64,000 bases of DNA, taken from positions 124,001-188,000 of IMG/VR virus record IMGVR_UViG_3300001782_000005. One strand, given 5' to 3'. Below, piece by piece: positions 12,539 through 60,139 of the stretch; the stretch's first letter is position 1; each line of letters starts with the position of its first letter. Below the pieces are notes generated by a model. It was given only the letters and a program-made list of their open reading frames with translations. It did not search any database and was not told the origin of the DNA. The translations under genes and the position numbers were made by a program.

Positions 12539-13057
12539 TTATATTAATACAAATCTACGTACCATCGCAATGACAACGTTCTTATCCACAAAATCTCCTG
12601 GACAAGTTTTATCCTTAATATTTGAAACCTCATGATGGAACTTAACTCTGTTTACATTCAATTTGAACATCTTAAGCAATGGATTTAAAAGTCTAAAAGC
12701 AAGAACTTCATATAACCTTTTCTCCGGAATTTTGAAATCATATGAACCAAGTAGAGCAACATGAATAGCCGACTTATTCATATTCACATCAATATCATCA
12801 TATTCGCAAAGAGTCACAAATGGCCGACAGGTTATGGGAACATAATCTTCTTTTATCTTATCAATAACAAAATGATAATTCACATCTCCGTGTTTCTGCT
12901 CCAGAACCTGATTATATATGGATTTCATTTGATACTTTGAATTATCAATCTTTGCATCGGTTGCCCCCGGATACTCATCAATAGTGTGGTGTAGGATAAT
13001 CCACTTAACCTTAGTACGCCTCATTTTAAGTATAGATGGTTTAAGTGGTATTCTCAT
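12539..13057 (-). CDS. N-acetylmuramoyl-L-alanine amidase (Amidase_2 / T7 lysozyme type)
   Basis: ILHHT, YHFVI, HHEV and KTCPG zinc-amidase motifs. Confidence 0.85.
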   Translation of the reverse strand: MRIPLKPSILKMRRTKVKWIILHHTIDEYPGATDAKIDNSKYQMKSIYNQVLEQKHGDVNYHFVIDKIKEDYVPITCRPFVTLCEYDDIDVNMNKSAIHVALLGSYDFKIPEKRLYEVLAFRLLNPLLKMFKLNVNRVKFHHEVSNIKDKTCPGDFVDKNVVIAMVRRFVLI

Positions 13058-37766: not shown

Positions 37767-38159
37767 TCATATACCAATTCTCTCAAGTCCAAATGGACTG
37801 GCATTAAATCTATGCCTACATTTAGCACACATTATATTAGTACAAAGTCCTCCTTGAGGTCCCTCAAGAAATTCCCGACCACCACAATCCGGACAGCAAT
37901 TATACTTTCTAGCTATCCTTGTTAATTCTTCATCATCCATCACAACCTTATCACATATTTCAGTACAATTAGTTGTAACTATACAATCAGTGCAGGGAAA
38001 TAATTCTCTTTCAATTCTCATAACTACATTTGTTGGTTTAACCATTTCATAGGTAACTTCTGATGGATGCTCATATTCTCCATCTTTCAAAAACCCAAAA
38101 AGTTTAAACATCTGAGTACAGAAATCCCAAACGAATGACATTTTTTTCCTTTCTACCAA
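37767..38159 (-). CDS. Cx2Cx5Cx3C plus Zn-ribbon protein
   Basis: FPCTDCIVTTNCTEIC; CPDC...CAKC. Confidence 0.6.
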   Translation of the reverse strand: MVERKKMSFVWDFCTQMFKLFGFLKDGEYEHPSEVTYEMVKPTNVVMRIERELFPCTDCIVTTNCTEICDKVVMDDEELTRIARKYNCCPDCGGREFLEGPQGGLCTNIMCAKCRHRFNASPFGLERIGI

Positions 38160-38461
38160 CCAGGTCCAGCTACAGAATATTTATAACTACAACCTTTACA
38201 TCTATAAATATTTCCCAATGCTGGCGGTTGACAATCACGAAACCATTCGGTTTCTCCGGTTCTTTGAATAATTCCCCCACAGTATGGACACATACCCGGA
38301 TATATATCACTTATGTAGCTAACTTGTGCCTGGTCAACTTTATCACACCTCTCTTGGCAAGTCTGAATCAATATGCATCCGGTACATGGATATTTGAATC
38401 TTCTAATTTCCCACTCGTATTTTAACTTCTTTATCCACATTCTAAACCGATAACCCACCAT
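38153..38461 (-). CDS. Cx2Cx5Cx3C plus Zn-ribbon protein (tandem paralog)
   Basis: YPCTGCILIQTCQERC; CPYC...CKGC; start at ATG 38461 after AAGGAGG. Confidence 0.6.
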   Translation of the reverse strand: MVGYRFRMWIKKLKYEWEIRRFKYPCTGCILIQTCQERCDKVDQAQVSYISDIYPGMCPYCGGIIQRTGETEWFRDCQPPALGNIYRCKGCSYKYSVAGPGW

Positions 38462-38505
38462 ACCCTCCTTCCAATTAAAAAAATCAACAAGTCTATTATT
38501 CATAA

Positions 38506-38624: not shown

Positions 38625-39569
38625 ATGAATATAAAAATTGAACGATCTATACGACAAGCATTGTGTCCATGTAGGTATGGTTCGTGGGGTAGTAAATTCA
38701 AATGTAGCTCCTTAAATGGTTCAAAACCATTATTTAATATAGATCATATGCTACTAGTTAACATTATTCAAGATATGTTAATTCAGAATTATTGGGATGG
38801 GAGGAACAACGGAGAAATACCCAAATCCTGGAAAAATCCAATAGTTTGGAAAGGTATTAAACCATTGATACATAGAGGAGATTGGTTCAATATATATAAT
38901 GGTACATCAACTGAGCGTTCAAAAGATTATACTTATACCTATCTATATAATAAATATCCCTTTCTAAAGGAGCGTATAAAACATGCCGGATCATTGAAAA
39001 AGTTGATTCTAGAGCTTAATAATATGAGATTCAACTTAGTTATGAGAGTAAGAGCAGTATATCATGCGAAAAAGAAGATGTACAATTATCAAACTCATAA
39101 AGATTATAATAAAGAATATCCTGAATACGATAGTTTCTTTATGAATACAATGAATAAACCAGCATCAAAATTATTTAACTTTGAGATAACCAAGGAAGAA
39201 AAATTTAGTAGAGGTGGTATATCAGATATTGAATTTCATATAAAGATGAACAATATATACTTCTATTCAATGTACCAGGGTGCCATGTATGTAACTATCG
39301 ACTGGATACCCGAGGAGATATATACCCTGAAGATGAACAATTATAGTAAATTTCTTTATATACTAATGCTAGCAGGGAAGGTAAAAAAGGACTATGAGTA
39401 TAACTTGGGTGAAATAGTTGAAAAACTACAGCTGAAACCTAATCAAAAGAAGAGTCAATTATGTATGCTCATTGATAGGTACTTAGATGATCTGGTGCAA
39501 AATAACTTTATCGAAGTAGAATCAAGGGGTGGATTTAAGAATAGAAGATATATTATAAATAGAAAGTGA
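38625..39569 (+). CDS. Putative replication initiator / winged-helix DNA-binding protein
   Basis: Basic; C-terminal wHTH-like (L.EI.EKL...YLDDLV...FIEV...G....Y.I); directly followed by tandem repeats. Confidence 0.5.
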   Translation: MNIKIERSIRQALCPCRYGSWGSKFKCSSLNGSKPLFNIDHMLLVNIIQDMLIQNYWDGRNNGEIPKSWKNPIVWKGIKPLIHRGDWFNIYNGTSTERSKDYTYTYLYNKYPFLKERIKHAGSLKKLILELNNMRFNLVMRVRAVYHAKKKMYNYQTHKDYNKEYPEYDSFFMNTMNKPASKLFNFEITKEEKFSRGGISDIEFHIKMNNIYFYSMYQGAMYVTIDWIPEEIYTLKMNNYSKFLYILMLAGKVKKDYEYNLGEIVEKLQLKPNQKKSQLCMLIDRYLDDLVQNNFIEVESRGGFKNRRYIINRK

Positions 39570-39572: not shown

Positions 39573-39666
39573 AAAAAGTATATTCATTACCCAAAAAGTA
39601 TATTCATTACCCAAAAAGTATATTCATTACCCAAAAAGTATATTCATTACCCAAAAAGTATATTCA
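39573..39666 (+). repeat. Perfect 20-bp tandem direct repeats (iteron/centromere-like)
   Basis: AAAAAGTATATTCATTACCC x4 plus a 14-bp partial copy, no spacers. Confidence 0.95.
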
Positions 39667-39848
39667 AGAGGCCATAAAAATTTGAATAAAATTAAAGATT
39701 TACAGAACCACATTTTCCCTGATTTATGATAATGATTTATGACACTCCGGTGTGGTTCATTGGTTTCACCACACCAAAGTGCTTTTGGGCATACGCCTTA
39801 TACGTTAAAGAACAAATCAAAAAGAAAAACAAAAAAGGAGATCAACGA

Positions 39849-41840
39849 ATGTACAATGGAGAAGAAACAGTATGGGTTAATCAAAAGGAATTTCAGTACA
39901 AAGATGTAGAATATGGTTCAGCTTCAACAATGGATATTTCAACTTCAATTAATACGAAAGATTTCAAATATTTTTCACAGGTGACTCTAAACATCTCAAT
40001 TACTTCAGATTCGGATAGAAGTAGGAGAAATTGTAATTTAAATATTAATGATGTTAGGAGTTTGTTCAACTCTTTCTTAGAGGTTTCAAGAGATTATAAG
40101 GCCGCTTATGAAAAAGAAGAACCATTCAAAATCTCAAATAAATATGGTAATAAATACCTTGAGATTATGTATAAACTTTCAAGAACTCAAGTAAGATGTG
40201 TCGTGTTAACTATTATCCACAGTGAGAATGATTATGGTCAAATAGTAATTCCTTTAGAAGAATTTGAGACAATAGTTCATATATTCTCATTGTTTCGTCA
40301 TAGTTATCACATATTTAGAAAAGAACTCAAAGATCAAATCATTAATCATAAGATAGTTGAAAATACTTCAGCAATGGAAAGAGCTATTAGGACTTTACCT
40401 TCCTCAATTTCCACATCTCAGGTAGAATTTCCAAGTTTTAATATTGAAACACCAATCGAGTCTACTGAAGAGCAGAATGATTTTGAGAAATATGTTAAAG
40501 ATGAAGAGGTTCTAGAAAAACCTCTTCCGGAAGAAAAGAGGATAGAACAACAACAAGAGGTAGAGGCACCTCCAGAAATAAATAGTGAATTTATTCGTGA
40601 TGTTTTAAAGTTGGATATGGGAAATTATGAGAGATTACTTGCAGCAGCATCTGGAGAGTATAATACAACTGAGGCGATATTAGAAAGGTTAAAAGAAACT
40701 ATAACACAATCTGAAGATTATGAATTTTTGCCGGGAATATCTGAGAGTGATTATAAATCTGCTCTATATATTTCAAGGTTTAATTATTTAACTGGATTCA
40801 AATTATATTCCAGAGATAAAATTCAAATTCCAACTTCTATCGCTCCGATTAAATATAGACCCGATAAATCCAAAGTTCAAGATTTAAACGTTGAAGTAGC
40901 TTATGATCTATTGACAATAAGTGCTTTTGTAAAATGTTTAGTTCAGAAACTAGGTCAAAAGATTGCAGATAGTCAGAGTAATAAATCACTATTCTATTAT
41001 GCACATAGGTGCTTTACTGATATTTTATGCTTTAGTTTTCTGACTGATGTGGAAGGAAGTATTGTAAAGAATTGTGTAATGACAAGATTTCGAGATTATG
41101 AGAAGATAGGATTTTTCAAGCAATATCAAGATCTTCTTCTTGTAAATAATTGTACTTCTGTCGTTGAGCAGGATATACAGTCATTTCTGGATCTTTTAGT
41201 TGAGAAGGTTTTACCTGCTGAGCTCTATATTAATAATTTACATAATAAACTCCATGAAGATAAATTATTGCTACCTGCTACAAATAAGGTTAGTTTAGAA
41301 CAAATTACAAATGAGGTAGTTAAGATTAACGTTCTTCATTTTGTTAAGGAATTGAATGTTTATGAGATTGATTTAGCACAACTAAATCAGACTATTAATA
41401 TGCAAATTCCTCCTGAGTTATTTGATTTATTACGTGCTCCGAAAAGTTTGAGAAAACCGGTGGAGAAGACAAAATATAACTCTAATCTCCATTGGTATTT
41501 TAATAAATATCAAGGTGACCTTCCAAAGGGTCATGAAGATAAATTAATTAGTTATTTTGAACAACTTGGAGATAATGATTTTCCATTTGATAATCCTCCT
41601 ATAAATTTGGAAGATTTAGAGGAGAGATATATACGAGCAATATATCATCATAATAGTTTGGAGAAGGATCAGAGGAACTTAAAACGAAATGACTTTATCA
41701 CGTATGTTCATGAAGAATGTACTATGTCGAAAAGGAATATTCTTGATATATATAAGGCCAAAGAAGAAGAAGAAGAAAAAGAATTGAAAAAAGATATAGT
41801 TGAAGATTTTGGTGCTATGTTGGAGGCCATGGAAGAATAG
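39849..41840 (+). CDS. Large hypothetical protein; N-terminus possibly a Whirly/PC4-like ssDNA-binding fold; acidic tail
   Basis: Start reassigned to ATG 39849 (AAAGGAG RBS); two strands-then-helix units; EEEEE...MEE end. Confidence 0.45.
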   Translation: MYNGEETVWVNQKEFQYKDVEYGSASTMDISTSINTKDFKYFSQVTLNISITSDSDRSRRNCNLNINDVRSLFNSFLEVSRDYKAAYEKEEPFKISNKYGNKYLEIMYKLSRTQVRCVVLTIIHSENDYGQIVIPLEEFETIVHIFSLFRHSYHIFRKELKDQIINHKIVENTSAMERAIRTLPSSISTSQVEFPSFNIETPIESTEEQNDFEKYVKDEEVLEKPLPEEKRIEQQQEVEAPPEINSEFIRDVLKLDMGNYERLLAAASGEYNTTEAILERLKETITQSEDYEFLPGISESDYKSALYISRFNYLTGFKLYSRDKIQIPTSIAPIKYRPDKSKVQDLNVEVAYDLLTISAFVKCLVQKLGQKIADSQSNKSLFYYAHRCFTDILCFSFLTDVEGSIVKNCVMTRFRDYEKIGFFKQYQDLLLVNNCTSVVEQDIQSFLDLLVEKVLPAELYINNLHNKLHEDKLLLPATNKVSLEQITNEVVKINVLHFVKELNVYEIDLAQLNQTINMQIPPELFDLLRAPKSLRKPVEKTKYNSNLHWYFNKYQGDLPKGHEDKLISYFEQLGDNDFPFDNPPINLEDLEERYIRAIYHHNSLEKDQRNLKRNDFITYVHEECTMSKRNILDIYKAKEEEEEKELKKDIVEDFGAMLEAMEE

Positions 41841-41851: not shown

Positions 41852-42463
41852 ATGGGATTAACTTTAGGAAAATCTCTTGATCGTTGTTTCAGTATGAGAT
41901 TGCCATTTCTCGATGGATATTATAATATAGGTGTATTTTTTAATAAGAAATCTACTTTCTTACTATTTAAAGTTGATTCTGATTTTCCTAAGGGAGATAG
42001 AAGCGTTCATGGTATAAAGATAAATATGTTTAAAAATATTGAATCATCTAAATTTTGTGAAACTTTTTTGAGTTTACACAGTTACCGAGGAGATAATCTA
42101 GATATATTAAATCAATTTGATTCGATCAGAGATGAATATTACTCGGAAATAAATTTTATCTTGAATGAGACAATAGTTCTTTCAAAAGTCAAAACTGGAG
42201 AAAAAACATTTTTTGATCAACTAATGATATATGGTTTTACTCTCTCTGCATTTCAATCGGAGATAATTTTTCTTCTAGCTGAGAGGCAGAACATTGTTAG
42301 GCGTTTTAGTAAGAAGATCGTGAGAACGACGGGTATCCAAATTGCTACGACTTCAGCATTAGAGATGATAAATGAATTTCACGAAGATTTTAAGGTAGGT
42401 GGTAAAGTGGGGCTAGAACCAAAGTTCCCAATAGATGAGGTAATAAAACTAGAGGAAGAATAA
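41852..42463 (+). CDS. Hypothetical protein
   Basis: ORF with AGGAG RBS. Confidence 0.5.
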   Translation: MGLTLGKSLDRCFSMRLPFLDGYYNIGVFFNKKSTFLLFKVDSDFPKGDRSVHGIKINMFKNIESSKFCETFLSLHSYRGDNLDILNQFDSIRDEYYSEINFILNETIVLSKVKTGEKTFFDQLMIYGFTLSAFQSEIIFLLAERQNIVRRFSKKIVRTTGIQIATTSALEMINEFHEDFKVGGKVGLEPKFPIDEVIKLEEE

Positions 42464-43683
42464 TGCCTACTAAACCAGATAGATATGAGTATACGTTCAT
42501 ACACAATGTTTACGCTCACTTTTTTAGTTCTACTGCTGATTACTTTTCGAAGCATGTATGGCCCAGATTTCTGTGGGTAACCATTGGTACATATGATAAG
42601 GCAGTTGAGTACATTGCTAAAAAACAGCAAGAGGCAAGAGAAACAGACAAACCATTACTCCCTGCTCTCATTTTGAATCCTGCTGGCGATTGGAATGTAT
42701 CTGACTACGGCGGTAAACAATATTGGAGATTTCCAAACCTTCAACCGGGTTTTGTAGATAAGCTATTTGATCCTATCTATCAAGATCAGAATGTTTTGAT
42801 AACTCCCGCATTTACAAGGATATCTGGTGAGTTAGAGCTGATAATGCTCTTAAATTCATTTTATGAGTATTGTGATGTTAGAACTTTAATGCTACTTATT
42901 TTTGGAGGCATGGAAAGAATAATATATCCAAAATGGTTTCATAGTTTTATAATACTTCCAGAAGAACTAATTAATTATAGATATAACAATCCGGTTACTG
43001 GTGTTTCATATAATCTGAATTGGGAATCTGCTAATGCAAACCCAGAATTAGTCAAAAGCACTGCAAGAAATGAACTTGTAGTTCCGTGTAATATTAGACC
43101 GTGGTATAAATTAACTTCGATAAGTGATGCTAGCACAAAGTATGGTGGAGATAAACTTGCAGACTGGAGATTATCAGCACAGATTCAATATGAAGTTGAG
43201 TTGCCCACATTTTTAGTTATTAAATCTGATTACCTACTTGAAAATATTGAGTATGAGCTAAGGTATGGAGCAGTTTATACTGAATATGAAGATTATAATA
43301 ACCCCGCCAACAGGCAGTATTGGAGGACTAGTTGGGACTGGGGTCTTGATACTACTGCGTCTATGACAATTGATCTTTCTCTACTTCAGGAACAGGTTGA
43401 TATAGTAGAGGAAAAAGATTTTGTTTTCAAAACTAGATATTTTCATGTTGTAACCGCTGCTGAAGCAGATTCAACAGCTGATATTATAATTGATATGCCG
43501 GAGCAAATAACGGATGAAAAGAGGTTGATTGTAAATTCCTATGCCGGTCATTTAGATTACTGGGATCACTATGAATTAATTGATAATGGTACGAAATTAT
43601 TAATCAAAATTCCTCAAGTTAGACTTAGAGAGGGAGATGTTCTTGAATTATATGTATATGAGGTAACTTATGAAAATCCTTGA
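42463..43683 (+). CDS. Putative virion structural protein (tail-completion-like)
   Basis: 406 aa, beta-rich, LPALIL segment; weak assignment. Confidence 0.35.
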   Translation: MPTKPDRYEYTFIHNVYAHFFSSTADYFSKHVWPRFLWVTIGTYDKAVEYIAKKQQEARETDKPLLPALILNPAGDWNVSDYGGKQYWRFPNLQPGFVDKLFDPIYQDQNVLITPAFTRISGELELIMLLNSFYEYCDVRTLMLLIFGGMERIIYPKWFHSFIILPEELINYRYNNPVTGVSYNLNWESANANPELVKSTARNELVVPCNIRPWYKLTSISDASTKYGGDKLADWRLSAQIQYEVELPTFLVIKSDYLLENIEYELRYGAVYTEYEDYNNPANRQYWRTSWDWGLDTTASMTIDLSLLQEQVDIVEEKDFVFKTRYFHVVTAAEADSTADIIIDMPEQITDEKRLIVNSYAGHLDYWDHYELIDNGTKLLIKIPQVRLREGDVLELYVYEVTYENP

Positions 43684-44227
43684 CAAATATCTTGAAGGTT
43701 TGATGATAGGGCAAACTAATAAGGTAGAATTTGAAGTAGATGTCGCTGCTGGAGTTATAGTTCGTCTAGATGAGAATGGAGTTCCCGAAATTCTACTTAT
43801 TCAGAGAGCTAAAGAAGATCACTGGCCAAGTCATTGGGAGTTTCCAAGAGGAAAATGTGATCAAGGTTCAGATGAGAATTTATATCCTTGCCTAAAAAGA
43901 GAGATTAAAGAAGAAACTGGTCTTGATATAATTCCTCTTAGATTTATTGATCAATTTGAATATTTGGCTATGGGAGGTAAAAGAAAATCAACACAATATA
44001 ATTATCTTTGTAAGTTAGAAAAACCAGACCAGATAGTTAAGTTATCAAAAGAGCATCAAGATTATAGATGGGTAAGAACTGCTGGAGAAGTTGAACTAAT
44101 GGTTAACGCTGGTGAAATGAAAAGAACTCTTGTAAAAGTATTTGATTTTGACCATAGAATGGTTGCATATCCAGAAGATGGTTCAATTGAAAAAATTAAG
44201 GAATCGAAGAAAATTTGGGGTAAATAA
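43670..44227 (+). CDS. NUDIX hydrolase
   Basis: WEFPRG...E......REIKEETGL Nudix box; LS.EH..Y.W. Confidence 0.9.
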   Translation: MKILDKYLEGLMIGQTNKVEFEVDVAAGVIVRLDENGVPEILLIQRAKEDHWPSHWEFPRGKCDQGSDENLYPCLKREIKEETGLDIIPLRFIDQFEYLAMGGKRKSTQYNYLCKLEKPDQIVKLSKEHQDYRWVRTAGEVELMVNAGEMKRTLVKVFDFDHRMVAYPEDGSIEKIKESKKIWGK

Positions 44228-44700
44228 TGAAACTTACTATTAAGCAGGCTGGCCTATTCTTAACATTAACAGGGATTAAACCATTTAGGACTCCCGCTGT
44301 AGTTGATATATCGAAGGTAGACTTAAATACCCTTAGAATGGAATTAAAGCAGTATGGTGTGATAAACTATGAGATAGTTGAGGAGATAATTTCAGAATCA
44401 GTACAACCAAGGCGAAAACCTCAGAAGAATCCATTAGCAGAGAAAGTAGATGCAATATATAAAATGATGCAACAACTGATAGAGAGAGAACCAACGGTTG
44501 AGCATCACTACCATTCTGCTGTACAGACTTTAGATAGGTTAGTGGAGGAAAAATTTGATGAACCCGATGTAGAAGAGTTCATCCCCGGAATTGATATTAG
44601 TGATCTTAGTGATGTTGAATTAGATTATAGAACTGAACAGGCAGAAGATGTTATGGACGCAGCAGAGAAACTAAGGAAACTAAAAGGAGGAGATACATAG
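44227..44700 (+). CDS. Hypothetical protein abutting the actin-like gene (candidate adaptor)
   Basis: Ends at 44700 and the next gene starts at 44701; central helix and acidic C-terminal half. Confidence 0.5.
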   Translation: MKLTIKQAGLFLTLTGIKPFRTPAVVDISKVDLNTLRMELKQYGVINYEIVEEIISESVQPRRKPQKNPLAEKVDAIYKMMQQLIEREPTVEHHYHSAVQTLDRLVEEKFDEPDVEEFIPGIDISDLSDVELDYRTEQAEDVMDAAEKLRKLKGGDT

Positions 44701-45804
44701 ATGAGTGATGAAGAAAAGAAAGAGGAGATAGTTGAGCAGCCTGAGATAGTACCTCACCCGCCTCCACCTCGACCAGAGAAAAAAGATAATAGATTATTTA
44801 TTGGTCTTGATTGTGGGACAATGAATATCTGCTGTGCCAGAAATGATGTAGACCAGATTAGAATTACAAGAAATGTCTTTCTGCCAATTAGCGACGATTC
44901 TGTTTCAATGTCTGAGTTATCAAATATTAGCTATGTGAAATCAGATGATGGAGAATTGTTTATTATAGGAGAAGATGCGTTTAAATTTGCAAATATATTT
45001 GGTCAAGCAGTTTCTCGACCAATGGAGAAGGGTTTAATCTCTCCAAAAGAGATATCTGCAATTGATGTTCTCACATTAATAGTCAAAGATCTAATAGGTC
45101 CAGTGCAGAATAGAGATGTTTATTGTGCTTATAGTATCCCTGCTGAAGCGATTGACGAAACTAGATCTGTTATCTATCATACAAGAGTATTTGGTCGAAT
45201 TTTGGGTGCCCTTGGCGTCAATCATCGCCCAGTTAACGAAGGTGCAGCAATTATATACTCAGAGTGTAGTAAGGAGAGGTTTTCTGGAGTTGGAATATCT
45301 TTTGGTGCAGGTATGTGTAATGTTGCAATAATGTATAAGGGAGTGGAAGTTTTAAAGTTCTCTACTTCTAGAAGTGGGGATTATATTGATAATTCCGTTT
45401 CCGAATCTCTAAATATAGTTCCAAACAGAGTGACTTCAATAAAAGAAAGACGTCTTGATCTAACTAAAGGTTTTATGCAAGAGAAGGACAAAAAAATAAG
45501 GCGAGTTATTGAGGCACTTGAGTATTATTATTCTGCTCTTATAAACTATACAATAAAAAAGATAATTAATGAATTTAATGAGAAGGTTGACATTGAAGTT
45601 GACGAGAATTTGCCAGTTATTATATCTGGAGGAACGTCAATGCCGAATGGTTTTCTTGAGTTGTTTAAGTCTATGATATCTCAATATGAGTTGCCATTTG
45701 GTGTTAGTGAAGTAAGGAGGGCTAAGAATCCACTTACTTCTGTTGCAAACGGTTTACTTGTTTTAACTGTTGCTGATTTCTCAGGAACAAAAATAAAAAG
45801 ATAG
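44701..45804 (+). CDS. Actin-fold ATPase (MreB/ParM/MamK superfamily)
   Basis: Phosphate-1 IGLDCGT, connect-1 NEGAA, phosphate-2 SFGAG, adenosine ISGGTS, connect-2 NPLTSVANG. Confidence 0.85.
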   Translation: MSDEEKKEEIVEQPEIVPHPPPPRPEKKDNRLFIGLDCGTMNICCARNDVDQIRITRNVFLPISDDSVSMSELSNISYVKSDDGELFIIGEDAFKFANIFGQAVSRPMEKGLISPKEISAIDVLTLIVKDLIGPVQNRDVYCAYSIPAEAIDETRSVIYHTRVFGRILGALGVNHRPVNEGAAIIYSECSKERFSGVGISFGAGMCNVAIMYKGVEVLKFSTSRSGDYIDNSVSESLNIVPNRVTSIKERRLDLTKGFMQEKDKKIRRVIEALEYYYSALINYTIKKIINEFNEKVDIEVDENLPVIISGGTSMPNGFLELFKSMISQYELPFGVSEVRRAKNPLTSVANGLLVLTVADFSGTKIKR

Positions 45805-45816
45805 GAGGCAGTTACA

Positions 45817-46377
45817 ATGAAGTCAGATAAATTAGTAGACCTTGTACTTGACGGAAAGTACAATAAAGTTAAAGAAGCGGAGAGATTAGTAGACCAGCTA
45901 CTTGAGAGCTGTGGTAAGAAGCATGTAAAAGAAGGCGATGGTGGTGAAGAAGTTGAAACTGTGACTGGTACTGACGTTGGTGATGCATCAGGTCATCTCT
46001 CATCTGTTCCAAAAGAGAAGGAACAAAGAAAGGAAGAGATTGCAAAAGAACAAACTGACCTCGAACCGGCAAAAGAACCTGAGAAAGTAGAAAATGAACT
46101 GGATTCAGGTGACGTTGATCAGAATGTTGGGAGTTTAAAGAAAGATGTTAAAGCTGATGTCGCTAAAGAGGTAGAGGGTGCTCTCTCCGAGGCTAAAGAA
46201 CTTGGTCCAGAAGATTTCAAAGACTATTTTGAAGACCTGAAGAAAAAAGGCCTAACGGATGAAAAGAAATTATATGGAATGTTGAATCGAGCGAAAGAGA
46301 TTGCGAAGAATCAAGGGAAAGAGAATGACAAAAGAGCTATAACGGGGATTATGCAGGGATTCCTAGGTGGCAAATAA
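45817..46377 (+). CDS. Acidic, low-complexity protein (possibly internal head protein)
   Basis: E/K/D-rich; AGGAGG RBS. Confidence 0.45.
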   Translation: MKSDKLVDLVLDGKYNKVKEAERLVDQLLESCGKKHVKEGDGGEEVETVTGTDVGDASGHLSSVPKEKEQRKEEIAKEQTDLEPAKEPEKVENELDSGDVDQNVGSLKKDVKADVAKEVEGALSEAKELGPEDFKDYFEDLKKKGLTDEKKLYGMLNRAKEIAKNQGKENDKRAITGIMQGFLGGK

Positions 46378-46402: not shown

Positions 46403-47659
46403 GTGAAAAGAGCAAGATTTTCGAGGCAACCGGTAGCTAAACAGATAACTCCACTCGAACTAAGAATGTTTGGTCTTTCTGAAGATTCAATAAAATTAGT
46501 TGACAAGATAGAAGAATTGAGGTCAGACCCTCCGAATATTGTGATTGCGGAATGTCTGAAAACTGCTCATTTTATTCAAAATAAATTTAAGCAACAAGTT
46601 GTGAAAAAGAAAAGTAAATATGTAATGGGTTTGGGGGTATATGAGCAGTTAAAATTTGAACCAAAGATGAATGCCAAAATATTGAGACCCGCTAAAGTAA
46701 AATTTAAAAACATATATAATCCATATATAGGTCATGATCTTGAAGATGAAACCCTTATAGTATGGAGAACCGGGGGTATCGGCGACCTTTTATTTATCCA
46801 ACCAAACCTAAATTATCTCAAAGAAATATATCCAACTTGTGAAATCATTTTAGCCTGTGGTCCTCAGTATCAAGCAATGGTTGAAGATTGGCCAGCGGTT
46901 GATATGGTTCTTGATCTTCCTTTCCTATTTCAATACTTAATTAGAGCTGATTACCATGCAGTTTTTGAAGGAGTTATCGAAAGATGTAAAGAAGCACAAA
47001 CTACAAATGCATATGAGTTATTTACTAGATGGTTAGGTTTAGATCTCCCAAAAGATAGATTAGTACCTACACAAGATGTAAAACTAGACAAACTTGAAGA
47101 GTGTAAGAAGATTTTGGAAGATGAATGGAACTTAGAAGGGATAGATTTTATTATTATTCAATTAAGGGCTAGTTCTCCAATTAGGTCTCCAAGGTTAGGT
47201 CTTTGGGGAGATATAATAAATCGTTTGACTAAAAATGATCATGTGGTAATAATTACTGATGCACCTCATTATGCAAAAGAAATAGATTTTCTAATTGATA
47301 AATTTATAAAAGATAAAGATCTTGTGTTTAATTTTGCGCATCATTCAAAGAGTTTGGATTATACCATTGCTCTAACTTCATTAGCAAAGATGGCATTATC
47401 TACTGATACTGCTATGATGCACCTTGCTGCTGCTTTAGATATTAAAGGATTTGGACTTTATGGTCCTTTTCCTGGAGAAATAAGACTTACTACATATCCA
47501 AAAAGTCGTTGGATAAATGCTGAGTATCATTGTGCTCCATGTTTTTTACATGGCCATAAACCTTGCCCCGGTGCTGCTGCAGATGGAACTCCAAGATGCT
47601 ATGAGCAAATAAATTTAGATGAACTTATTGAAAGGATTGAGGAGTTGTACAATGATTAA
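46403..47659 (+). CDS. Glycosyltransferase family 9 (heptosyltransferase-like)
   Basis: GGIGDLL, DTAMMHLAAAL, LYGP, CAPC...C. Confidence 0.85.
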   Translation: MKRARFSRQPVAKQITPLELRMFGLSEDSIKLVDKIEELRSDPPNIVIAECLKTAHFIQNKFKQQVVKKKSKYVMGLGVYEQLKFEPKMNAKILRPAKVKFKNIYNPYIGHDLEDETLIVWRTGGIGDLLFIQPNLNYLKEIYPTCEIILACGPQYQAMVEDWPAVDMVLDLPFLFQYLIRADYHAVFEGVIERCKEAQTTNAYELFTRWLGLDLPKDRLVPTQDVKLDKLEECKKILEDEWNLEGIDFIIIQLRASSPIRSPRLGLWGDIINRLTKNDHVVIITDAPHYAKEIDFLIDKFIKDKDLVFNFAHHSKSLDYTIALTSLAKMALSTDTAMMHLAAALDIKGFGLYGPFPGEIRLTTYPKSRWINAEYHCAPCFLHGHKPCPGAAADGTPRCYEQINLDELIERIEELYND

Positions 47660-48482
47660 AATTGCAGTCACTATTCGTAATAGACTTGCAATTACTAAAA
47701 AGTGTATAGCAGCGATTAAAAAGCATTCAAAGATTCCCCACCAGTTATATTTATATAATAATTCAACTAATCATCTAATAAAGGAACATTTTGAATATGC
47801 TTATAATCTCTATAAGAATGGATTAGTAACGCAAATAACCTTCAATACTGATGCTAGTACATATAAGGCATTTAGTAAAGCATCTGCTCTAAATGCTTTT
47901 GGGTTAGCACATGAGCAAGACCCTGCTAAAGATAGTTATCATTTTTTAGTATTTCTTGATAACGATGTTATTGTTGTACCTGGTTGGGACCAAGTTTTTT
48001 ATGAAGGTTGGAAATTTGTTAATAATCAAAAATTGAGTAATATAAAAGTAATTGGCCAATTGCCAGGGGGGATTAAAGAAAGAAAAAATTTGAAAAGTCA
48101 AATTGCAGGATGTACTGCAGCGATGGGAAAGTTAGGCGGGTCTGGACTTTGGACTGTTAGGACAAACTTTTTTAGAGATATTGGATATTTAGATATAAAA
48201 CAATTAGTTGGACATAATAAACGCCATGACCAAATGTATTGGTCTTTAATGAATAGAAAGACTAATGGTAAGGAATATATTTTAGGTATTAGGAAAAAAC
48301 TTGGATACCATTGTGGTCCATTTGCTGGTTCCGTATGCAATATTCTCACGAAGCAAAAGGATAGCAAGATAAGTATGGAGGCAATAAAATTTAAGGAACA
48401 AGAGAAGAAAATCGAAGCAATGTCATTCGATGAATTTTATGAAAAGGTTATTACGGATCCAAGAGTTCAGCGAGGTTGGTAA
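47652..48482 (+). CDS. GT-A (GT2-like) glycosyltransferase
   Basis: RNRL..TKKC, FLDND DxD motif; start at ATG 47652. Confidence 0.75.
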   Translation: MIKIAVTIRNRLAITKKCIAAIKKHSKIPHQLYLYNNSTNHLIKEHFEYAYNLYKNGLVTQITFNTDASTYKAFSKASALNAFGLAHEQDPAKDSYHFLVFLDNDVIVVPGWDQVFYEGWKFVNNQKLSNIKVIGQLPGGIKERKNLKSQIAGCTAAMGKLGGSGLWTVRTNFFRDIGYLDIKQLVGHNKRHDQMYWSLMNRKTNGKEYILGIRKKLGYHCGPFAGSVCNILTKQKDSKISMEAIKFKEQEKKIEAMSFDEFYEKVITDPRVQRGW

Positions 48483-49402
48483 TGCAGAAAGCAGTCTTAA
48501 TGGGTCCTTTCATTGGGGAAATGGGGTGGGAATTGCTGAGGTTTGCTCCAATGCTTCCCTATATGAAGACAAAAAAGTATAAAGGTCAAAATGTAAAATT
48601 TATTGTTTTTACGAGGCCAGAGAGGTTTGACCTGTATGGTGTATGGGCAGACACTCTAGTGCCTCTTCGATTAAAGGGCGATTATCACAATTATAAACCT
48701 GAATGTTTCCGAGCAATAGGTTTTTCAGCTAAAACTTATAATAAACTTGCAGAATCTTTTAGGAAACAATTTTCTGCTAAATATAATATTATAGAACATA
48801 TATATCCAAAGATTACAAAACCTGCATATTTAAATAAGAATCAATATCCACAAAAAATTATGATTTATGATTACCGGCCTAGAAAGTCTAATAGAATTCT
48901 AGTTGGAAAGTATGTACCTAATGATAAACCAGTTGTTGTTTTGGGACCAAGATTTAGGAAGGGTTTCAGAAGAAATTGGCCTCATTGGCAGAAATTCTAT
49001 AGCATACTGTCAGCAAATAGTTGGTTAGTAAATAATTTTCATTTTGTGATTTGTGGAAAGGAACCTGAATATGTCCCGGATGAGCGACAGAGATTTTTCG
49101 ATATTAATAGTATCGAAAGGCATGAAAATAGCTCTCTTATTGGTCTTACTATTGAAACTATAAGAAGGTCAATGCTCGTTGTTGGGTCCCAGTCTGCTAT
49201 ACCAAATGTTGGCATGATATTAAGAGTTGAAGTTTTAGAGTGGGGTAATGAACCAAGAGAACATACAAAAACTTATAATGTCTTTAATACTAAAGTTAAC
49301 TTCATCACTGATAAATTTTATAAAACTCCGCCAGAGGCGATCATTAAAGACATGACGAAAATCCTGAAAAGAAAACTCAAAGAAGGAGCGAAAAATGAAT
49401 GA
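48476..49402 (+). CDS. Putative GT-B fold glycosyltransferase
   Basis: GPFIGEMGWE, RRNWPHW, VVGSQSA; context. Confidence 0.55.
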   Translation: MVMQKAVLMGPFIGEMGWELLRFAPMLPYMKTKKYKGQNVKFIVFTRPERFDLYGVWADTLVPLRLKGDYHNYKPECFRAIGFSAKTYNKLAESFRKQFSAKYNIIEHIYPKITKPAYLNKNQYPQKIMIYDYRPRKSNRILVGKYVPNDKPVVVLGPRFRKGFRRNWPHWQKFYSILSANSWLVNNFHFVICGKEPEYVPDERQRFFDINSIERHENSSLIGLTIETIRRSMLVVGSQSAIPNVGMILRVEVLEWGNEPREHTKTYNVFNTKVNFITDKFYKTPPEAIIKDMTKILKRKLKEGAKNE

Positions 49403-50444: not shown

Positions 50445-50747
50445 ATGCCCGGAACAGCATTCCTTACATCAATTGGAGTAGGTACTTGCTGCTGCCACCA
50501 CGATCCGGATTGTAGACCAAAAACTGGTATGATTGTTTCTGGATCTCCGGATAAGATTACGAATGGATTACCAACCGCAAGAATTGGGGACGTATTTTTA
50601 GGAACTTGTGGTCATACTTCTATAATGGCAAGTGGGTCTCCAAATGTGATTACAAATGGAAGGGGTCAATGTAGAATTGGCGATGTTTTTTCCGGCTGTA
50701 TAGTAGGAGTGATTGTTACAGGTTCTCCAGATTCTATCACTAACTAG
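50445..50747 (+). CDS. PAAR-repeat spike-tip protein (T4 gp5.4-like)
   Basis: SGSP....NG.PTARIGD repeats with Cys/His. Confidence 0.85.
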   Translation: MPGTAFLTSIGVGTCCCHHDPDCRPKTGMIVSGSPDKITNGLPTARIGDVFLGTCGHTSIMASGSPNVITNGRGQCRIGDVFSGCIVGVIVTGSPDSITN

Positions 50748-53370: not shown

Positions 53371-54366
53371 ATGAGAATTCTTTTCAATCTGGTTAATTGT
53401 GGACTAGGTAATAATGGAGGGTCATCTACAATAATTCATTCAGCTAATACTCTACTTGAAATGGGCCATAATGTAAAAATTATTGATAGTATGAAAAATA
53501 AGTTTACTTGGTTTCCATTAAAAGCAGATCATATAATATTGAGAGATTTAGACGATTGCCCAGATGCAGATGTGGTCATTGCAACAGGTTTCAAAACTGT
53601 AGCTCCTACTCTCAAGTTACCTAATAGGTGTGGAATTAAAGCACATTGGATAAGAGCATGGGAACACTGGCAAATGCCACATGATCAAATTCTTAGTAGA
53701 GTTCTTAATGTGCCAACCATCAAACTTGTTAATAGTTTATGTCTTCAAAGGAAACTTGAACAGTATCAAATTCCATCTCATATTGTAAGACCAGGATATG
53801 ATTTTGGAAAGTTATATCCTCTCAATCTTAGAAACTACAGAGATAAACAAATCATTATAGGCGCTCTTTACCGTGAGGGAGTCCATGGTCAGAGAAAGAG
53901 AACAAACTGGGCTCTTGATGTTGCAAAACAGTTACATACAACTAAGAAAATAAAATTTTGGATGTTTGGATCAGAATCAAAACCAAACCTTCCCTTCATT
54001 GATAATTATCTTAGAATGCCCTCATTTCAACAAAAGAATGAATTCTATAATAAAATTCATTTATGGATTGCACCCACTATGTCAGAAGGTCTACATCTTC
54101 CTCCTGCTGAAGCAATGATGACTGAATGTCCAGTTGTAGGTACTGATGCACAAATGAGCGGCATGCAGGATTATTTGATAGATGGTAAAACCGGTAGAGT
54201 ATCGGGAGACAGTTTTATGTCATTTTTTCATATTGTTAGAGAATTAATTAACCAACCTGGGGTCATGCAAACATTGGGAAAGAATGGTAGATTAAAGATT
54301 ATGGAATTGGGTGACCGGAAAACCAATATGTATCTAATGATTAACTATCTAAAGAGTTTAATATGA
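53371..54366 (+). CDS. Glycosyltransferase family 4 (GT-B)
   Basis: GG near the N-terminus; EGLHLPPAEAM Ex7E motif. Confidence 0.85.
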   Translation: MRILFNLVNCGLGNNGGSSTIIHSANTLLEMGHNVKIIDSMKNKFTWFPLKADHIILRDLDDCPDADVVIATGFKTVAPTLKLPNRCGIKAHWIRAWEHWQMPHDQILSRVLNVPTIKLVNSLCLQRKLEQYQIPSHIVRPGYDFGKLYPLNLRNYRDKQIIIGALYREGVHGQRKRTNWALDVAKQLHTTKKIKFWMFGSESKPNLPFIDNYLRMPSFQQKNEFYNKIHLWIAPTMSEGLHLPPAEAMMTECPVVGTDAQMSGMQDYLIDGKTGRVSGDSFMSFFHIVRELINQPGVMQTLGKNGRLKIMELGDRKTNMYLMINYLKSLI

Positions 54367-55196
54367 GCCTAAAAGTATATAAAGTAGCAGAAATACTAAA
54401 AGATCTTGAAAGTTCTATAGAAGAGAAGAGACCATTTTCTCTAATACGTTTTGGAGATGGTGGTATTAAATTAATTCATTCATACTACTTTCATGATCAT
54501 AAGCAATTATATGCAATCTGTAAGAAAGAAGGATTGCCAGGAGATAGAGTTAAATACATTATTGATTTATGGGCAAGATATGCAAATGAAGCTGATTATA
54601 TAGATTGCCTTGATGTTTATTTTTCAAAGCGTTTCTGGGGTAAGTATAGGAAGGGATTTGTTCAAGCATCTGATAAAACTTTGATGAGAATGAGAATGTG
54701 GAAAGAGTTATATAGTCGTGCAGGATTTGATATTCATAACGCTAAATACTGTAACCCAGAAGTTAATTATTTAATGTGTGTGGTTTTTCCTGGAAAGAAG
54801 ACTATCTTTGAGATAATGAAGGATAAGAAGGTATGTTGTATAACCTCTTGCCCACAAGCTATAAATAAGCTTCCCAATTATAATATTGACGTTATAGAAA
54901 TTGTTGGTCATTATGAGAGGCATTTTGCAAAATCTTTTTCTAAAGTTGTTAGTCTCATTGAAGGTCGTGCAAACCTCTATGATTTTTGGATTGTGGGAGC
55001 TGGAGAATTGGGTAGAATATATTCCGGATTAATCAAGGCTAGAGGAGGGAGAACGATTGATATGGGTTTTGTTATTGATTATTGGCACAATCAAGAAATC
55101 CCATCCCGACTTAATCAATTTATAGATCCCCATCCTCTAGATAAATTAAAGTTAGTATTGACAAAGTATGGGAAACCTTATGCAGAACACCTCTAA
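54363..55196 (+). CDS. GT-D fold (DUF1792-like) glycosyltransferase
   Basis: PFSLIRFGDG, VGAG..G, IDMG. Confidence 0.7.
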   Translation: MSLKVYKVAEILKDLESSIEEKRPFSLIRFGDGGIKLIHSYYFHDHKQLYAICKKEGLPGDRVKYIIDLWARYANEADYIDCLDVYFSKRFWGKYRKGFVQASDKTLMRMRMWKELYSRAGFDIHNAKYCNPEVNYLMCVVFPGKKTIFEIMKDKKVCCITSCPQAINKLPNYNIDVIEIVGHYERHFAKSFSKVVSLIEGRANLYDFWIVGAGELGRIYSGLIKARGGRTIDMGFVIDYWHNQEIPSRLNQFIDPHPLDKLKLVLTKYGKPYAEHL

Positions 55197-55926
55197 GAAA
55201 ATAGATATTACGATGACTAGTGTCCTTCGACCAAGTATAGTCGATGCGACTCTTAGGTCGTTCTGTGAAAAAATGTTGACTGATCGAGATAGATATCGTT
55301 TAATTATCAATATTGATCCAGTCGGTGAAAATATAAAACCAAAAGAAGTAATAAAAGTTTGTGAAAATTACTTTGATGATATTATTTATAATGTGGCTGA
55401 TAAACCATCATTCCCAGCTGCTGTAATATGGACTTGGAGAAAGGCAAGATCTGAGTGGATCTTTCACCTTGAAGATGACTGGAAAGTTTCTCGTGAAGTT
55501 AGCATAAATCATATGATCAACATTCTTAAAAAATATGAAGATATCGCATGCCTTAGACTTCCAAAACACCCCATTCCAAATAAAAGATTAATTATGATGT
55601 TTCGGTCTAGATATAAGTATAATCCCGATGGATTTTATATCGCTGATGATAGAAAAGCACAATTTGGCCTAAATCCGGTTTTGATAAGAGGAACTTTTGT
55701 TAGAAGAGCAGTTCCATTGATGGTTACATCTAAAAATCCTGAAAAACAATTTAGATATGGAAATATAGTAATGAGAGAGTTTATTATGAAATGGAAATAT
55801 GCAATTTATGGAACACCGGGTCAACCTACTCTTGCAATTGATAATGGTTTAGTATGGAGACAGACTCTAGGTTTCAATAAACCTGAACCAGAAGAAGGGC
55901 CATTTTTGGTATGGAAAAAGAAATAA
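55168..55926 (+). CDS. GT-A fold glycosyltransferase
   Basis: TS..RP, FHLEDDW, LNP. Confidence 0.7.
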   Translation: MGNLMQNTSKKIDITMTSVLRPSIVDATLRSFCEKMLTDRDRYRLIINIDPVGENIKPKEVIKVCENYFDDIIYNVADKPSFPAAVIWTWRKARSEWIFHLEDDWKVSREVSINHMINILKKYEDIACLRLPKHPIPNKRLIMMFRSRYKYNPDGFYIADDRKAQFGLNPVLIRGTFVRRAVPLMVTSKNPEKQFRYGNIVMREFIMKWKYAIYGTPGQPTLAIDNGLVWRQTLGFNKPEPEEGPFLVWKKK

Positions 55927-56678: not shown

Positions 56679-56687
56679 GGAGATAAG

Positions 56688-57965: not shown

Positions 57966-57969
57966 AAGT

Positions 57970-60127: not shown

Positions 60128-60139
60128 CGAGGATGGTAA

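What the first reader, a model, noticed from the sequence alone, without database searches (positions are those of the whole stretch)
44227..46377. Actin-fold ATPase with an abutting partner gene: candidate actin-based phage cytoskeleton or segregation machine
Seen: all five actin ATPase motifs in a 367-aa protein, with Ser replacing the usual Asp in phosphate-2 (SFGAG) and a Pro-rich N-terminal extension. It abuts a 157-aa gene and lies 5 kb from a perfect tandem-repeat array. Known: nucleus-forming phiKZ-like phages use the tubulin PhuZ, and type II plasmid partitioning uses ParM plus adaptor plus repeat centromere. Inference: this lineage may use an actin filament to position DNA or capsids, with 44227-44700 as adaptor.
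Basis: partly seen in the sequence, partly recalled or inferred. Interest (0 to 1): 0.8.

Follow-up and report, generated by a model that had tools for sequence, protein, structure and literature searches.

The report
Jumbo-phage volactin actin with adaptor
An uncultured 277-kb marine-sediment phage encodes a close relative of the archaeal filament-forming actin "volactin" next to a small adaptor-like protein; this gene pair recurs in most of the related large-phage contigs examined, which suggests an unstudied actin-based cytoskeleton in large phages.

Summary
ORFs 44227-44700 (157 aa), 44701-45804 (367 aa) and 45817-46377 (186 aa) are tightly packed on the + strand.

The 367-aa protein is a bona fide member of Pfam Volactin (PF25216, E 1.8e-70). 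It is about 40% identical to Haloferax volactin orthologs. Its confident model (pLDDT 93) is closest to MamK, MreB, BeeR and actin, not to kinases or Hsp70. The Ser in phosphate-2 (SFGAGM) is a family signature, not a defect.

The upstream gene is a conserved partner. A constant C-terminal tail (FIP motif, acidic stretch, amphipathic helix) sits behind variable N-terminal heads: a soluble beta domain, a zinc-ribbon-like motif, or a membrane anchor. A tail-bearing gene lies upstream in 45 of 49 independent viral loci. In 32 of the 35 cellular loci with a hit it is the gene immediately upstream. This is what a filament-to-cargo adaptor looks like.

The 20-bp array is real but absent from 89%-identical relatives, so the centromere idea is not supported, and neither is a ParMRC assignment. 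The cargo and biological role remain unknown.

Verdict: a new phage variant of a known actin family, not described in the literature I could search, and moderately to highly interesting.

The parts
44227..44700 (+). 157-aa partner (putative filament adaptor). Predicted layout: N-terminal beta-beta-beta-alpha-beta domain (residues 1-52), two helices (69-108), a disordered acidic linker, then a C-terminal tail.
   Evidence: ORF. Model with pLDDT 94 for residues 1-52. Family alignments A4 and A5. hhalign of the N-terminal domains gives E 5e-5, probability 67%. No Pfam, PDB or AFDB match.
44578..44682 (+). Conserved C-terminal tail of the partner: F118-I-P120 motif, an acidic stretch, and an amphipathic helix at 142-152 (DAAEKLRKLK). 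Proposed actin-binding peptide.
   Evidence: F118 and P120 are invariant in A4. The same tail occurs in the distant viral family. A tail HMM built without the window clade ranks this ORF 1st of 529 window frames (E 0.41). A tail HMM finds the gene immediately upstream of the actin in 32 of 35 cellular loci and an upstream same-strand gene in 45 of 49 non-training viral loci.
44701..45804 (+). 367-aa Volactin-family actin-like ATPase
   Evidence: PF25216 E 1.8e-70, 238 bits against a cut-off of 35. AlphaFold2 pLDDT 93.3, pTM 0.88. Foldseek top hits: MamK 5ljv, MreB 1jcf, BeeR 8r2n. Family profile against PDB sequences: MamK 2.8e-14. About 40% identity to the Haloferax loci.
44701..44790 (+). 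Pro-rich, probably disordered N-terminal extension (residues 1-30), specific to this lineage
   Evidence: Sequence. Low pLDDT. Outside the Pfam match. Relatives align from about residue 25-35 onward.
44803..44826 (+). Phosphate-1 motif GLDCGTMN (D37, G39, T40)
   Evidence: Conservation in A1 and A3
45292..45321 (+). Phosphate-2 motif GISFGAGMCN, with Ser200 in place of the usual Asp. This is the family signature.
   Evidence: S200 is at least 90% conserved and G202/G204 are conserved. The same motif is in the Haloferax orthologs. An intein in homolog P0122 starts within about ten residues of the point where its first Volactin match ends (residue 191), the region that carries this motif in the window protein.
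45619..45654 (+). Adenosine-binding motif IISGGTSMPNGF
   Evidence: G310 is invariant and G311/T312/F318 are at least 90% conserved
45817..46377 (+). 186-aa acidic, low-complexity ORF in the same operon. Conserved only in the nearest relatives and probably not a core part of the module.
   Evidence: the downstream family contains only L015 and L018. No Pfam or PHROG hit.
43670..44227 (+). NUDIX hydrolase gene. Its stop overlaps the partner's start. It is a conserved upstream neighbour within the window clade.
   Evidence: PF00293 E 2.3e-16. Synteny in L008-L014. Junction sequence.

Best explanation
The two genes encode a two-component cytomotive filament system of an uncultured jumbo phage. 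The phage is a 277-kb IMG/VR contig from marine sediment with T4-like replication genes.

Proposed mechanism:
- The 367-aa protein is a Volactin-family actin that binds and hydrolyses ATP and polymerises into dynamic filaments. This is inferred from family membership, an intact nucleotide-binding site, and a fold closest to MamK and MreB.
- The 157-aa protein is its adaptor. The conserved C-terminal tail (FIP motif plus amphipathic helix) is proposed to dock on the filament or its end.
- The small N-terminal beta domain is proposed to hold a phage-specific cargo, so that filament growth or turnover positions that cargo in the infected cell.

What is shown: family membership, the fold, the conserved pairing, and the constant-tail/variable-head architecture.
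What is inferred: polymerisation, the tail-actin contact, and cargo positioning.
What is unknown: the identity of the cargo (replicating DNA, procapsids or tails, or a membrane site).
For: Actin identity:
- Pfam Volactin, E 1.8e-70.
- 38-41% identity over about 320 residues to the haloarchaeal loci, including Haloferax. Volactin of Haloferax volcanii forms dynamic filaments in vivo whose tips touch the membrane (PMC10869688).
- Catalytic and nucleotide motifs are conserved.
- The model has pLDDT 93. The 50 best Foldseek PDB hits are MamK, MreB, BeeR, actins and Arps, plus EutJ at rank 43. The family profile hits MamK at 2.8e-14 and BeeR at 1.3e-10.

Spread:
- 1004 clusters at 50% identity.
- 295 IMG/VR contigs, up to 529 kb.
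- 467 loci in GTDB species genomes.

Partner:
- Abutting, with a 0-nt spacer and a Shine-Dalgarno sequence inside the partner's 3' end.
- Same gene order in all relatives examined.
- N-terminal domains of two divergent viral partner families align by hhalign, E 5e-5.
- The tail motif recurs.
- A tail HMM finds an upstream same-strand gene in 45 of 49 viral loci that were not used to build it.
- In cellular loci the tail HMM's best hit is the gene immediately upstream of the actin in 32 of 35 loci, with about 63 ORFs per locus.
- Heads differ: soluble beta domain, zinc-ribbon-like Cys motifs, coiled coil, membrane anchor/DUF7139.
- The published huge phage LR745208 carries the same pair.
- Some family members are fused to a ParB-type HTH domain. 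This hit is below Pfam's curated cut-off (E 3.5e-4 and 1e-3). If real, it would show that actin-plus-cargo-binder coupling recurs in the family.
Against: - There is no biochemical or imaging evidence for any phage member.
- The similarity between the window's tail and the distant family is not significant on its own (E 0.41). It rests on rank 1 of 529, its position in the protein, and synteny.
- The hhalign probability for the N-terminal domains is only 67%.
- The N-terminal domain has no known fold or DNA-binding signature.
- An amphipathic helix followed by a basic tail could instead be a membrane-targeting sequence.
- No cultured relative exists, so host and infection timing are unknown.
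Confidence: 0.68

Rival explanations
1. ParMRC-like DNA segregation or positioning. The 157-aa protein would be a ParR-like DNA-binding adaptor. It would bind the 20-bp x 4.7 array at 39573-39666 as a centromere, and the actin would push or pull phage genomes.
For: - The gene order (adaptor, then actin) and an adaptor with a C-terminal helix resemble ParR/ParM and AlpA/AlpC (PMC4446434 and PMC5539076, listed).
- Some family members are fused to a ParB-type HTH domain, a weak hit below Pfam's cut-off.
- PHROG 'partition protein' matches the C-terminal half weakly, E 1e-5.
- The array is a real, perfect repeat.
Against: - The array is 4.6 kb upstream of the pair, separated by four genes.
- It starts 3 nt after the stop of a 314-aa ORF with a weak winged-helix hit, at the strand switch and cumulative GC-skew minimum.
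- It exists only in contigs identical to the window over the held 13 kb (L001-L003). It is absent from relatives whose actin is 89% identical, where the homologous spacer has no array.
- The actin is nearest to MamK, MreB and BeeR; no ParM appears in the top 50 fold hits.
- The partner's N-terminal domain is not RHH or HTH and is not basic.
- The window shows a T4-like lytic replication set and no plasmid or lysogeny genes among the ORFs scanned.
Confidence: 0.1
2. Virion-assembly logistics. The filament-adaptor pair would move or gather large virion parts (filled heads, tails) in the crowded cell, with the adaptor head binding a structural protein.
For: - In the window, the 406-aa gene two genes upstream resembles T4 gp15 and tail-terminator clusters by language-model features (score 0.88, a lead only).
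- In the large, purely viral clade the module is flanked by genes with faint HK97-gp10-like, DUF2460 and 'virion structural protein' matches.
- The module is mostly on very large contigs.
Against: - All structural assignments of neighbours are below curated thresholds.
- The operon also holds NUDIX, glycosyltransferases and a Whirly/PurA-like protein.
- There is no expression-timing data.
Confidence: 0.15
3. Host take-over of cell shape or envelope synthesis. The phage actin would reorganise the host envelope or polysaccharide machinery, perhaps working with the adjacent glycosyltransferase cluster.
For: - Cellular volactin acts in cell-shape transitions (PMC10869688).
- GT9 and other glycosyltransferases follow the module throughout the window clade.
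- One homolog is fused to Wzz/GNVR/BY-kinase polysaccharide co-polymerase domains (P0201).
Against: - The phage adaptors lack the membrane anchor that the cellular partners have.
- The glycosyltransferase neighbourhood is not shared by the large viral clade.
- The fusion is a single cluster.
Confidence: 0.06
4. A non-polymerising ASKHA ATPase (kinase- or chaperone-like) that merely shares the fold.
For: - Ser replaces the canonical Asp in phosphate-2.
- EutJ appears among weaker matches.
Against: - The Ser is shared with volactin, which does form filaments.
- Top sequence-profile and fold matches are all filament formers. DnaK scores E 0.29, and no sugar kinase appears.
Confidence: 0.03

Closest known systems
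Volactin (VolA, HVO_2015) of Haloferax volcanii, Pfam PF25216
   Same: Same Pfam family, far above the cut-off. About 40% identity over the whole actin core. Same SFGAGM phosphate-2 signature. The gene immediately upstream carries a related C-terminal helix motif.
   Different: - Phage-encoded, in a bacterial-virus-like genome.
- The partner is a small soluble protein rather than a ~300-aa DUF7139 membrane protein.
- It has an extra Pro-rich N-terminus.
- Its role cannot be host rod-to-disk morphogenesis.
- In the tree the window clade is sister to a mixed clade of bacterial (nominally cellular) and viral sequences, not to the archaeal clade.
MamK (magnetosome actin; PDB 5ljv/5jyg), and MreB and BeeR
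   Same: Closest solved structures by profile (MamK E 2.8e-14) and by fold (TM 0.66/0.74). All form filaments.
   Different: Only about 18% identity. The Pfam MreB score of 21 bits is below its cut-off of 27. The phosphate-2 residue and the partner proteins are different.
ParM/ParR/parC type II partition, and the prophage AlpC/AlpA/alpS system
   Same: Works in a similar way on paper: an actin-like ATPase encoded next to a small adaptor, on a mobile element. AlpAC is the experimental precedent for a phage-borne actin (PMC4446434, PMC5539076).
   Different: - Not a ParM by sequence or by nearest fold.
- The adaptor has no recognisable DNA-binding fold.
- There is no conserved repeat array next to the operon.
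- The element is a lytic-looking jumbo phage rather than a plasmid or prophage.
PhuZ tubulin spindle of nucleus-forming jumbo phages (Chimalliviridae)
   Same: A cytoskeletal polymer encoded by a very large phage. PhuZ centres phage DNA and traffics capsids (PMC7950403, PMC4244570).
   Different: Actin fold, not tubulin. The window shows T4-like replication genes. No evidence here for chimallin or a phage nucleus; the rest of the genome could not be read.

Membership tests
Volactin family (Pfam PF25216) | Score above the curated Pfam gathering threshold over the full domain | tested here: met
   238.4 bits against a cut-off of 35; residues 34-354 cover profile positions 3-319 of 321
Volactin family (Pfam PF25216) | Full-length similarity to haloarchaeal volactin orthologs | tested here: met
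   38-41% identity over query residues 35-354 to the Haloferax, Haloarcula and Halorubrum loci. The window and these sequences fall in one tree with well-supported clades.
Volactin family (Pfam PF25216) | Family signature in the nucleotide site (phosphate-2 S-F-G-A/S-G-M/L; NE[AG]xA catalytic region; SGGTS/TGGTS adenosine motif) | tested here: met
Volactin family (Pfam PF25216) | Dynamic filament formation in vivo | not testable with these tools
   Shown only for H. volcanii VolA (PMC10869688). No phage member has been studied.
Filament-forming actin superfamily branch (MamK/MreB/actin) as opposed to ASKHA kinases and Hsp70 | Four-subdomain actin fold, with nearest structural neighbours being polymerising actins | tested here: met
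   Model pLDDT 93.3. Foldseek top 50 are MamK, MreB, BeeR, actin and Arp, with EutJ at rank 43; no sugar kinase or Hsp70 among them.
ParMRC type II partition system | ParM-family actin | tested here: not met
   No ParM Pfam hit. Only a weak, partial PHROG 'partition protein' match, E 1e-5. No ParM among the top 50 fold hits.
ParMRC type II partition system | ParR-type (RHH/HTH) DNA-binding adaptor | tested here: inconclusive
   The N-terminal domain is confidently modelled (pLDDT 94) as beta-beta-beta-alpha-beta, with no match in PDB or AFDB and no Pfam hit. DNA binding is neither indicated nor excluded.
ParMRC type II partition system | Centromere repeats adjacent to, and co-inherited with, the operon | tested here: not met
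   The array is 4.6 kb upstream of the pair and absent from the relatives examined (L004 and L008 at 89% actin identity, and L009, L010, L013)
PhuZ/chimallin nucleus-forming phage system | Phage tubulin PhuZ and shell protein ChmA in the genome | not tested
   Only 64 kb of the 277-kb genome is held. The ORFs scanned are T4-like replication, baseplate and glycosylation genes.
AlpC/AlpA prophage actin system | Sequence relationship to AlpC, with an AlpA-like adaptor binding alpS sites | not tested
   No AlpC sequence was available from a tool. The comparison is functional only (PMC4446434).

The most novel reading that the evidence does not exclude
Large uncultured phages carry their own actin cytoskeleton, as PhuZ phages carry a tubulin one: a Volactin-type filament plus a modular adaptor family. 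The adaptors share a short tail that would dock on the filament, while their interchangeable heads would select the cargo. The same tail motif marks the gene upstream of cellular volactin (haloarchaeal DUF7139 membrane protein, Magnetococcales small membrane protein). It would therefore identify the unknown volactin-binding membrane anchor that the tip-attached filaments seen in Haloferax imply.
Probability: 0.4. Interest if true: 0.8.

Novelty: new variant of a known kind. Interest (0 to 1): 0.64.

Why it matters
Phage-encoded cytoskeletons are so far known mainly from tubulins (PhuZ, TubZ) and from one prophage actin (AlpC). Here a different actin family, characterised experimentally only in one haloarchaeon, turns out to be most diverse in viruses: 295 IMG/VR contigs, many of 100-530 kb. 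No isolate among the 50,697 GenBank phage records searched has a detectable homolog, which may explain why the searchable literature does not describe it.

The conserved partner with a constant tail and swappable heads gives a concrete, testable model for how these filaments are coupled to cargo. It also nominates candidate volactin-binding proteins in haloarchaea and in Magnetococcales. If confirmed, actin-based intracellular organisation would be a second, independent solution used by large phages.

Tried and rejected
- Single-sequence PDB search of the actin gave nothing. Only the family profile reached MamK and MreB.
- The search for related loci with the 71-sequence alignment failed because no block was conserved enough. 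It was redone with a closer alignment.
- Word-indexed homolog search for the partner found only close relatives. An iterative HMM on upstream ORFs stayed within the window clade. Wider kinship was recovered only through architecture, hhalign and a tail HMM.
- Fold searches of the partner in PDB and AFDB clusters, a Pfam scan of all 35 partner sequences, a PDB profile search, and Atlas look-alikes all gave nothing usable.
- The centromere idea was rejected after the array proved absent from the relatives examined.
- The sigma-70 promoter scan was no better than shuffles.
- Neighbour annotation: the 704-, 203-, 406- and 314-aa ORFs have no Pfam, PHROG or PDB hits. Only Atlas leads exist (gp15-like; Whirly/PurA-like).
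- My printed 'adjacent upstream' count was wrong because of a sign slip in the window test. The coordinates listed in that output give 32 upstream-adjacent, 2 downstream-adjacent and 1 elsewhere.
- Archaeal-virus reading prompted by the NCBI 'Heimdallarchaeaceae' and 'Thermoplasmatales' labels: rejected as probable mis-binning. Those contigs have the same phage synteny, and a clade member encodes an SLT lytic transglycosylase.
- No RNA runs hold the locus.
Full report
**1. What is there**

The + strand carries a tightly packed operon that starts after a strand switch at about 38.2-38.6 kb. Within it are a NUDIX hydrolase gene (43670-44227), a 157-aa ORF (44227-44700), a 367-aa ORF (44701-45804) and a 186-aa acidic ORF (45817-46377).

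The NUDIX stop overlaps the 157-aa start. The 157-aa stop is followed immediately by the actin ATG, with a GGAGG-type ribosome-binding site inside the upstream gene.

**2. The genome**

The window is 100% identical over the held stretch to IMG/VR contig IMGVR_UViG_3300001782_000005 (277,131 bp). Two further contigs are identical over the same 13 kb. The DNA occurs in marine-sediment and seawater metagenomes.

The minus-strand block at 1-38 kb encodes:
- a UvsX/RecA-like recombinase;
- a Dda-like helicase;
- a clamp loader;
- a primase;
- a class I ribonucleotide reductase;
- a Cas4-like nuclease;
- a 5'-3' exonuclease;
- a gp5-like baseplate hub.

A PAAR protein and many glycosyltransferases lie downstream. 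No cultured phage is close: the RecA-like protein reaches only about 30% identity to Bacillus, Staphylococcus and Microcystis phages.

Some close homologs carry NCBI labels such as 'Heimdallarchaeaceae archaeon' or 'Thermoplasmatales archaeon'. Their contigs show the same phage gene order, and one clade member encodes an SLT lytic transglycosylase. I read the labels as binning artefacts and the host as bacterial.

**3. The actin**

- Pfam places the 367-aa protein in Volactin (PF25216) at E 1.8e-70 (238 bits, cut-off 35). MreB and FtsA score below their thresholds.
- A 71-sequence alignment shows that D37, G39, T40, E180, S200, G202, G204, G310, G311 and T312 are invariant or nearly so.
- The AlphaFold2 model is confident (pLDDT 93.3, pTM 0.88).
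- Its best PDB neighbours are the MamK filament (5ljv; TM 0.66/0.74), MreB, BeeR, actins and Arps. EutJ appears at rank 43, and no sugar kinase or Hsp70 is in the top 50.
- The family profile hits MamK at 2.8e-14, BeeR at 1.3e-10, MreB at about 1e-7 and FtsA at about 1e-6.

The Ser in phosphate-2 is not a lineage oddity. SFG[AS]GM occurs in 65 of 78 viral homologs and SFGAG[ML] in 77 of 79 cellular homologs, including the Haloferax orthologs of volactin. Volactin itself forms dynamic filaments in vivo that span the cytoplasm and touch the membrane with their tips (PMC10869688).

**4. Spread and phylogeny**

The family has 1004 clusters at 50% identity with E <= 1e-3, of which 298 reach 1e-30. 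Relatives are encoded on 295 IMG/VR contigs, many of 100-530 kb. They also occur at 467 loci in GTDB species genomes. The 80 best-scoring loci listed are mostly Halobacteria, with Magnetococcales, Desulfosarcina and a few others.

Among 50,697 GenBank phage records, only two uncultured huge phages match: LR745208 (485 kb) and LR756511 (595 kb).

In a FastTree of 92 sequences:
- the window sits in a fully supported clade of 14 (12 viral contigs, the window, and one mis-binned MAG contig);
- that clade is sister to a mixed clade of bacterial (nominally cellular) and viral sequences;
- the archaeal volactins form a separate clade;
- 51 sequences form a purely viral clade;
- the tree is unrooted, so I infer no direction of transfer.

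**5. The partner**

Gene order around the actin is conserved in the window clade: ~650 aa, ~203 aa, ~410 aa, NUDIX, sometimes a small ORF, a 150-200-aa partner, the actin, a variable gene, and GT9.

The partner evolves faster than the actin (64% against 89% identity in the same relative). It keeps the following architecture:
- an N-terminal domain of about 55 aa (G9, G16, R21 and P23 invariant);
- a helical, charged linker;
- an invariant F-I-P motif;
- an acidic or Ser-rich stretch;
- a C-terminal amphipathic helix.

The model gives pLDDT 94 for residues 1-52 (beta-beta-beta-alpha-beta) and a helix at 142-152.

A 28-member BLAST family of upstream genes from the distant viral clade has the same layout: '...FIPxxIV...S/E-rich...LDDAAxALKALRK' followed by a basic tail. 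hhalign aligns the N-terminal domains of the two families at E 5e-5 with 67% probability.

A tail HMM built only from the distant family ranks the window's 157-aa ORF first of 529 frames, aligned across the whole motif. The score alone is not significant (E 0.41).

A tail HMM built from both families was run on 49 viral loci that were not used to build it:
- 45 loci had a hit at E <= 0.1, many at 1e-7 to 1e-13;
- every hit was on the actin's strand and upstream;
- 16 were immediately adjacent, and 29 had one inserted gene between them and the actin.

**6. The same tail in cellular loci**

The phage-derived tail HMM was searched against 5,076 six-frame ORFs from 80 cellular loci. It gave a best hit at E <= 0.1 in 35 loci (count corrected from the listed coordinates):
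- 32 were the ORF immediately upstream of the actin, with gaps of up to about 190 nt;
- 2 were the ORF immediately downstream;
- 1 lay elsewhere.

In Magnetococcales the upstream protein is a ~140-aa membrane protein ending '...FIPxxQ...RRTVERSVEDVARKLSSMQ'. In haloarchaea it is a ~300-aa DUF7139 membrane protein with two helix motifs ('VDDAVAGLQGLRGG' and 'STDDQAAALAELRK'). In Desulfosarcina and some phages the head carries zinc-ribbon-like Cys motifs.

A constant tail with interchangeable heads, always encoded next to the filament gene, is the pattern expected of an adaptor that links a polymer to different cargos or anchors. [quoted passage not shown] That link is my inference.

**7. The 20-bp array**

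The array begins 3 nt after the stop of a 314-aa ORF whose C-terminus has a weak winged-helix hit. It lies upstream of a 704-aa ORF whose N-terminus looks Whirly/PurA-like by an Atlas structure search (a lead only). It sits at the strand switch and the cumulative GC-skew minimum.

It is present with the same copy number in the three identical contigs. It is absent from L004 and L008, whose actin is 89% identical, and the homologous spacer there shows no array. It is also absent from the more distant relatives examined. It therefore does not co-vary with the actin module, and I do not count it as part of the module. An iteron or operator for the neighbouring 314-aa protein is a more economical guess, but I did not test it.

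**8. Function**

The best-supported statement is mechanistic rather than biological. This is a polymerising actin plus a cognate adaptor, expressed from one translationally coupled operon in a jumbo phage. The cargo is open.

- DNA positioning (the ParMRC or AlpAC style) has precedent. ParB-HTH-Volactin fusions (P0167, P0181; weak hits) would show that DNA-binding heads exist in the family. The window's adaptor, however, shows no DNA-binding signature.
- Virion logistics is hinted at by faint structural-gene neighbours in two clades.
- Envelope or shape take-over is hinted at by the glycosyltransferase neighbourhood and by one Wzz/BY-kinase fusion.
- None of these is decisive.

**9. Novelty**

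Full-text searches found volactin papers only on haloarchaea. They found phage actin work only on AlpC/AlpA and on plasmid-prophage ParM-like proteins. Nothing described Volactin-family actins or this adaptor in phages. The library is incomplete, so prior description elsewhere cannot be excluded.

I rate this a new variant of a known kind: a known actin family and a known adaptor-filament logic, but a new host (jumbo phages), a new adaptor family and a newly recognised shared tail motif.

Noticed in passing
window 39573-39666: Perfect 20-bp x 4.7 tandem array (AAAAAGTATATTCATTACCC). It starts 3 nt after the stop of a 314-aa ORF (38625-39569) with a weak winged-helix hit, at the strand switch and cumulative GC-skew minimum. 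It is present only in contigs identical to the window. It could be an iteron or operator array, and looks like a recent local expansion.
   Followed up: partly
P0122 and other 700-800-aa representatives: Volactin homologs are interrupted by an intein with an HNH endonuclease, which starts within about ten residues of the end of the first Volactin match. Several clusters show the same split match.
   Followed up: partly
P0167, P0181 (also P0151, P0173, P0180 by eye); P0201; P0256; P0125: Domain fusions in the family: ParB-type HTH + Volactin (weak hits below Pfam's cut-off); Volactin + Wzz/GNVR/ParA-like BY-kinase; Volactin + Ser/Thr protein kinase; a tandem double Volactin.
   Followed up: partly
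L137-L142, L150 (Haloferax) and other haloarchaeal loci, upstream of the actin: The DUF7139 membrane protein encoded immediately upstream of volactin carries two copies of the helix motif found in the phage adaptors. It is a candidate volactin membrane anchor.
   Followed up: partly
L098-L116 (Magnetococcales): Magnetococcales genomes and MAGs (17 loci among the 80 best, L098 and L100-L116) carry a Volactin-family actin (40-43% identity to the window). A ~140-aa membrane protein ending in the FIP...VEDVARKL tail lies upstream in most of them. I did not check whether this lies in magnetosome gene clusters.
   Followed up: no
P0034, P0078, P0119; L095, L103: Contigs labelled Heimdallarchaeaceae, Heimdallarchaeota or Thermoplasmatales at NCBI carry this phage clade's gene order (checked for P0078 in L010-L012 and for L095). 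They are probably mis-binned phage contigs.
   Followed up: partly
window 39726-41840: The N-terminal ~150 residues of the 704-aa ORF resemble Whirly/PurA/DUF3276 ssDNA-binding folds in an Atlas structure search (TM by hit 0.6-0.68; a lead only).
   Followed up: no
window 42463-43683: The 406-aa ORF is nearest to viral clusters that include T4 gp15 tail-sheath-stabiliser and tail-terminator families by language-model features (0.88-0.95). There is no Pfam, PHROG or PDB support.
   Followed up: partly
window 46403-49402 and 53371-61171: Large glycosylation cluster: GT9 heptosyltransferase-like, two GT1 genes and a B12-binding radical SAM enzyme in the window; the equivalent genes in relative L008 also match GT-D-like and pyruvyl-transferase families. 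GT9 is conserved next to the actin module throughout the window clade.
   Followed up: no
window 50445-50747 and 13057-14070: A PAAR-motif protein and a gp5/VgrG-like OB-fold baseplate hub, consistent with a contractile-tail (myovirus-type) virion.
   Followed up: no
window 37767-38503 (- strand): Two adjacent small Cys-rich ORFs (130 and 116 aa) with paired CxxC motifs lie at the divergent promoter region. Function unknown.
   Followed up: no
L175 (LR745208, 485 kb) 2334-3981: This published huge-phage genome carries the same adaptor-actin pair (207-aa partner with FIPSN...SDAMGALKAVRKK). The record is unannotated.
   Followed up: yes
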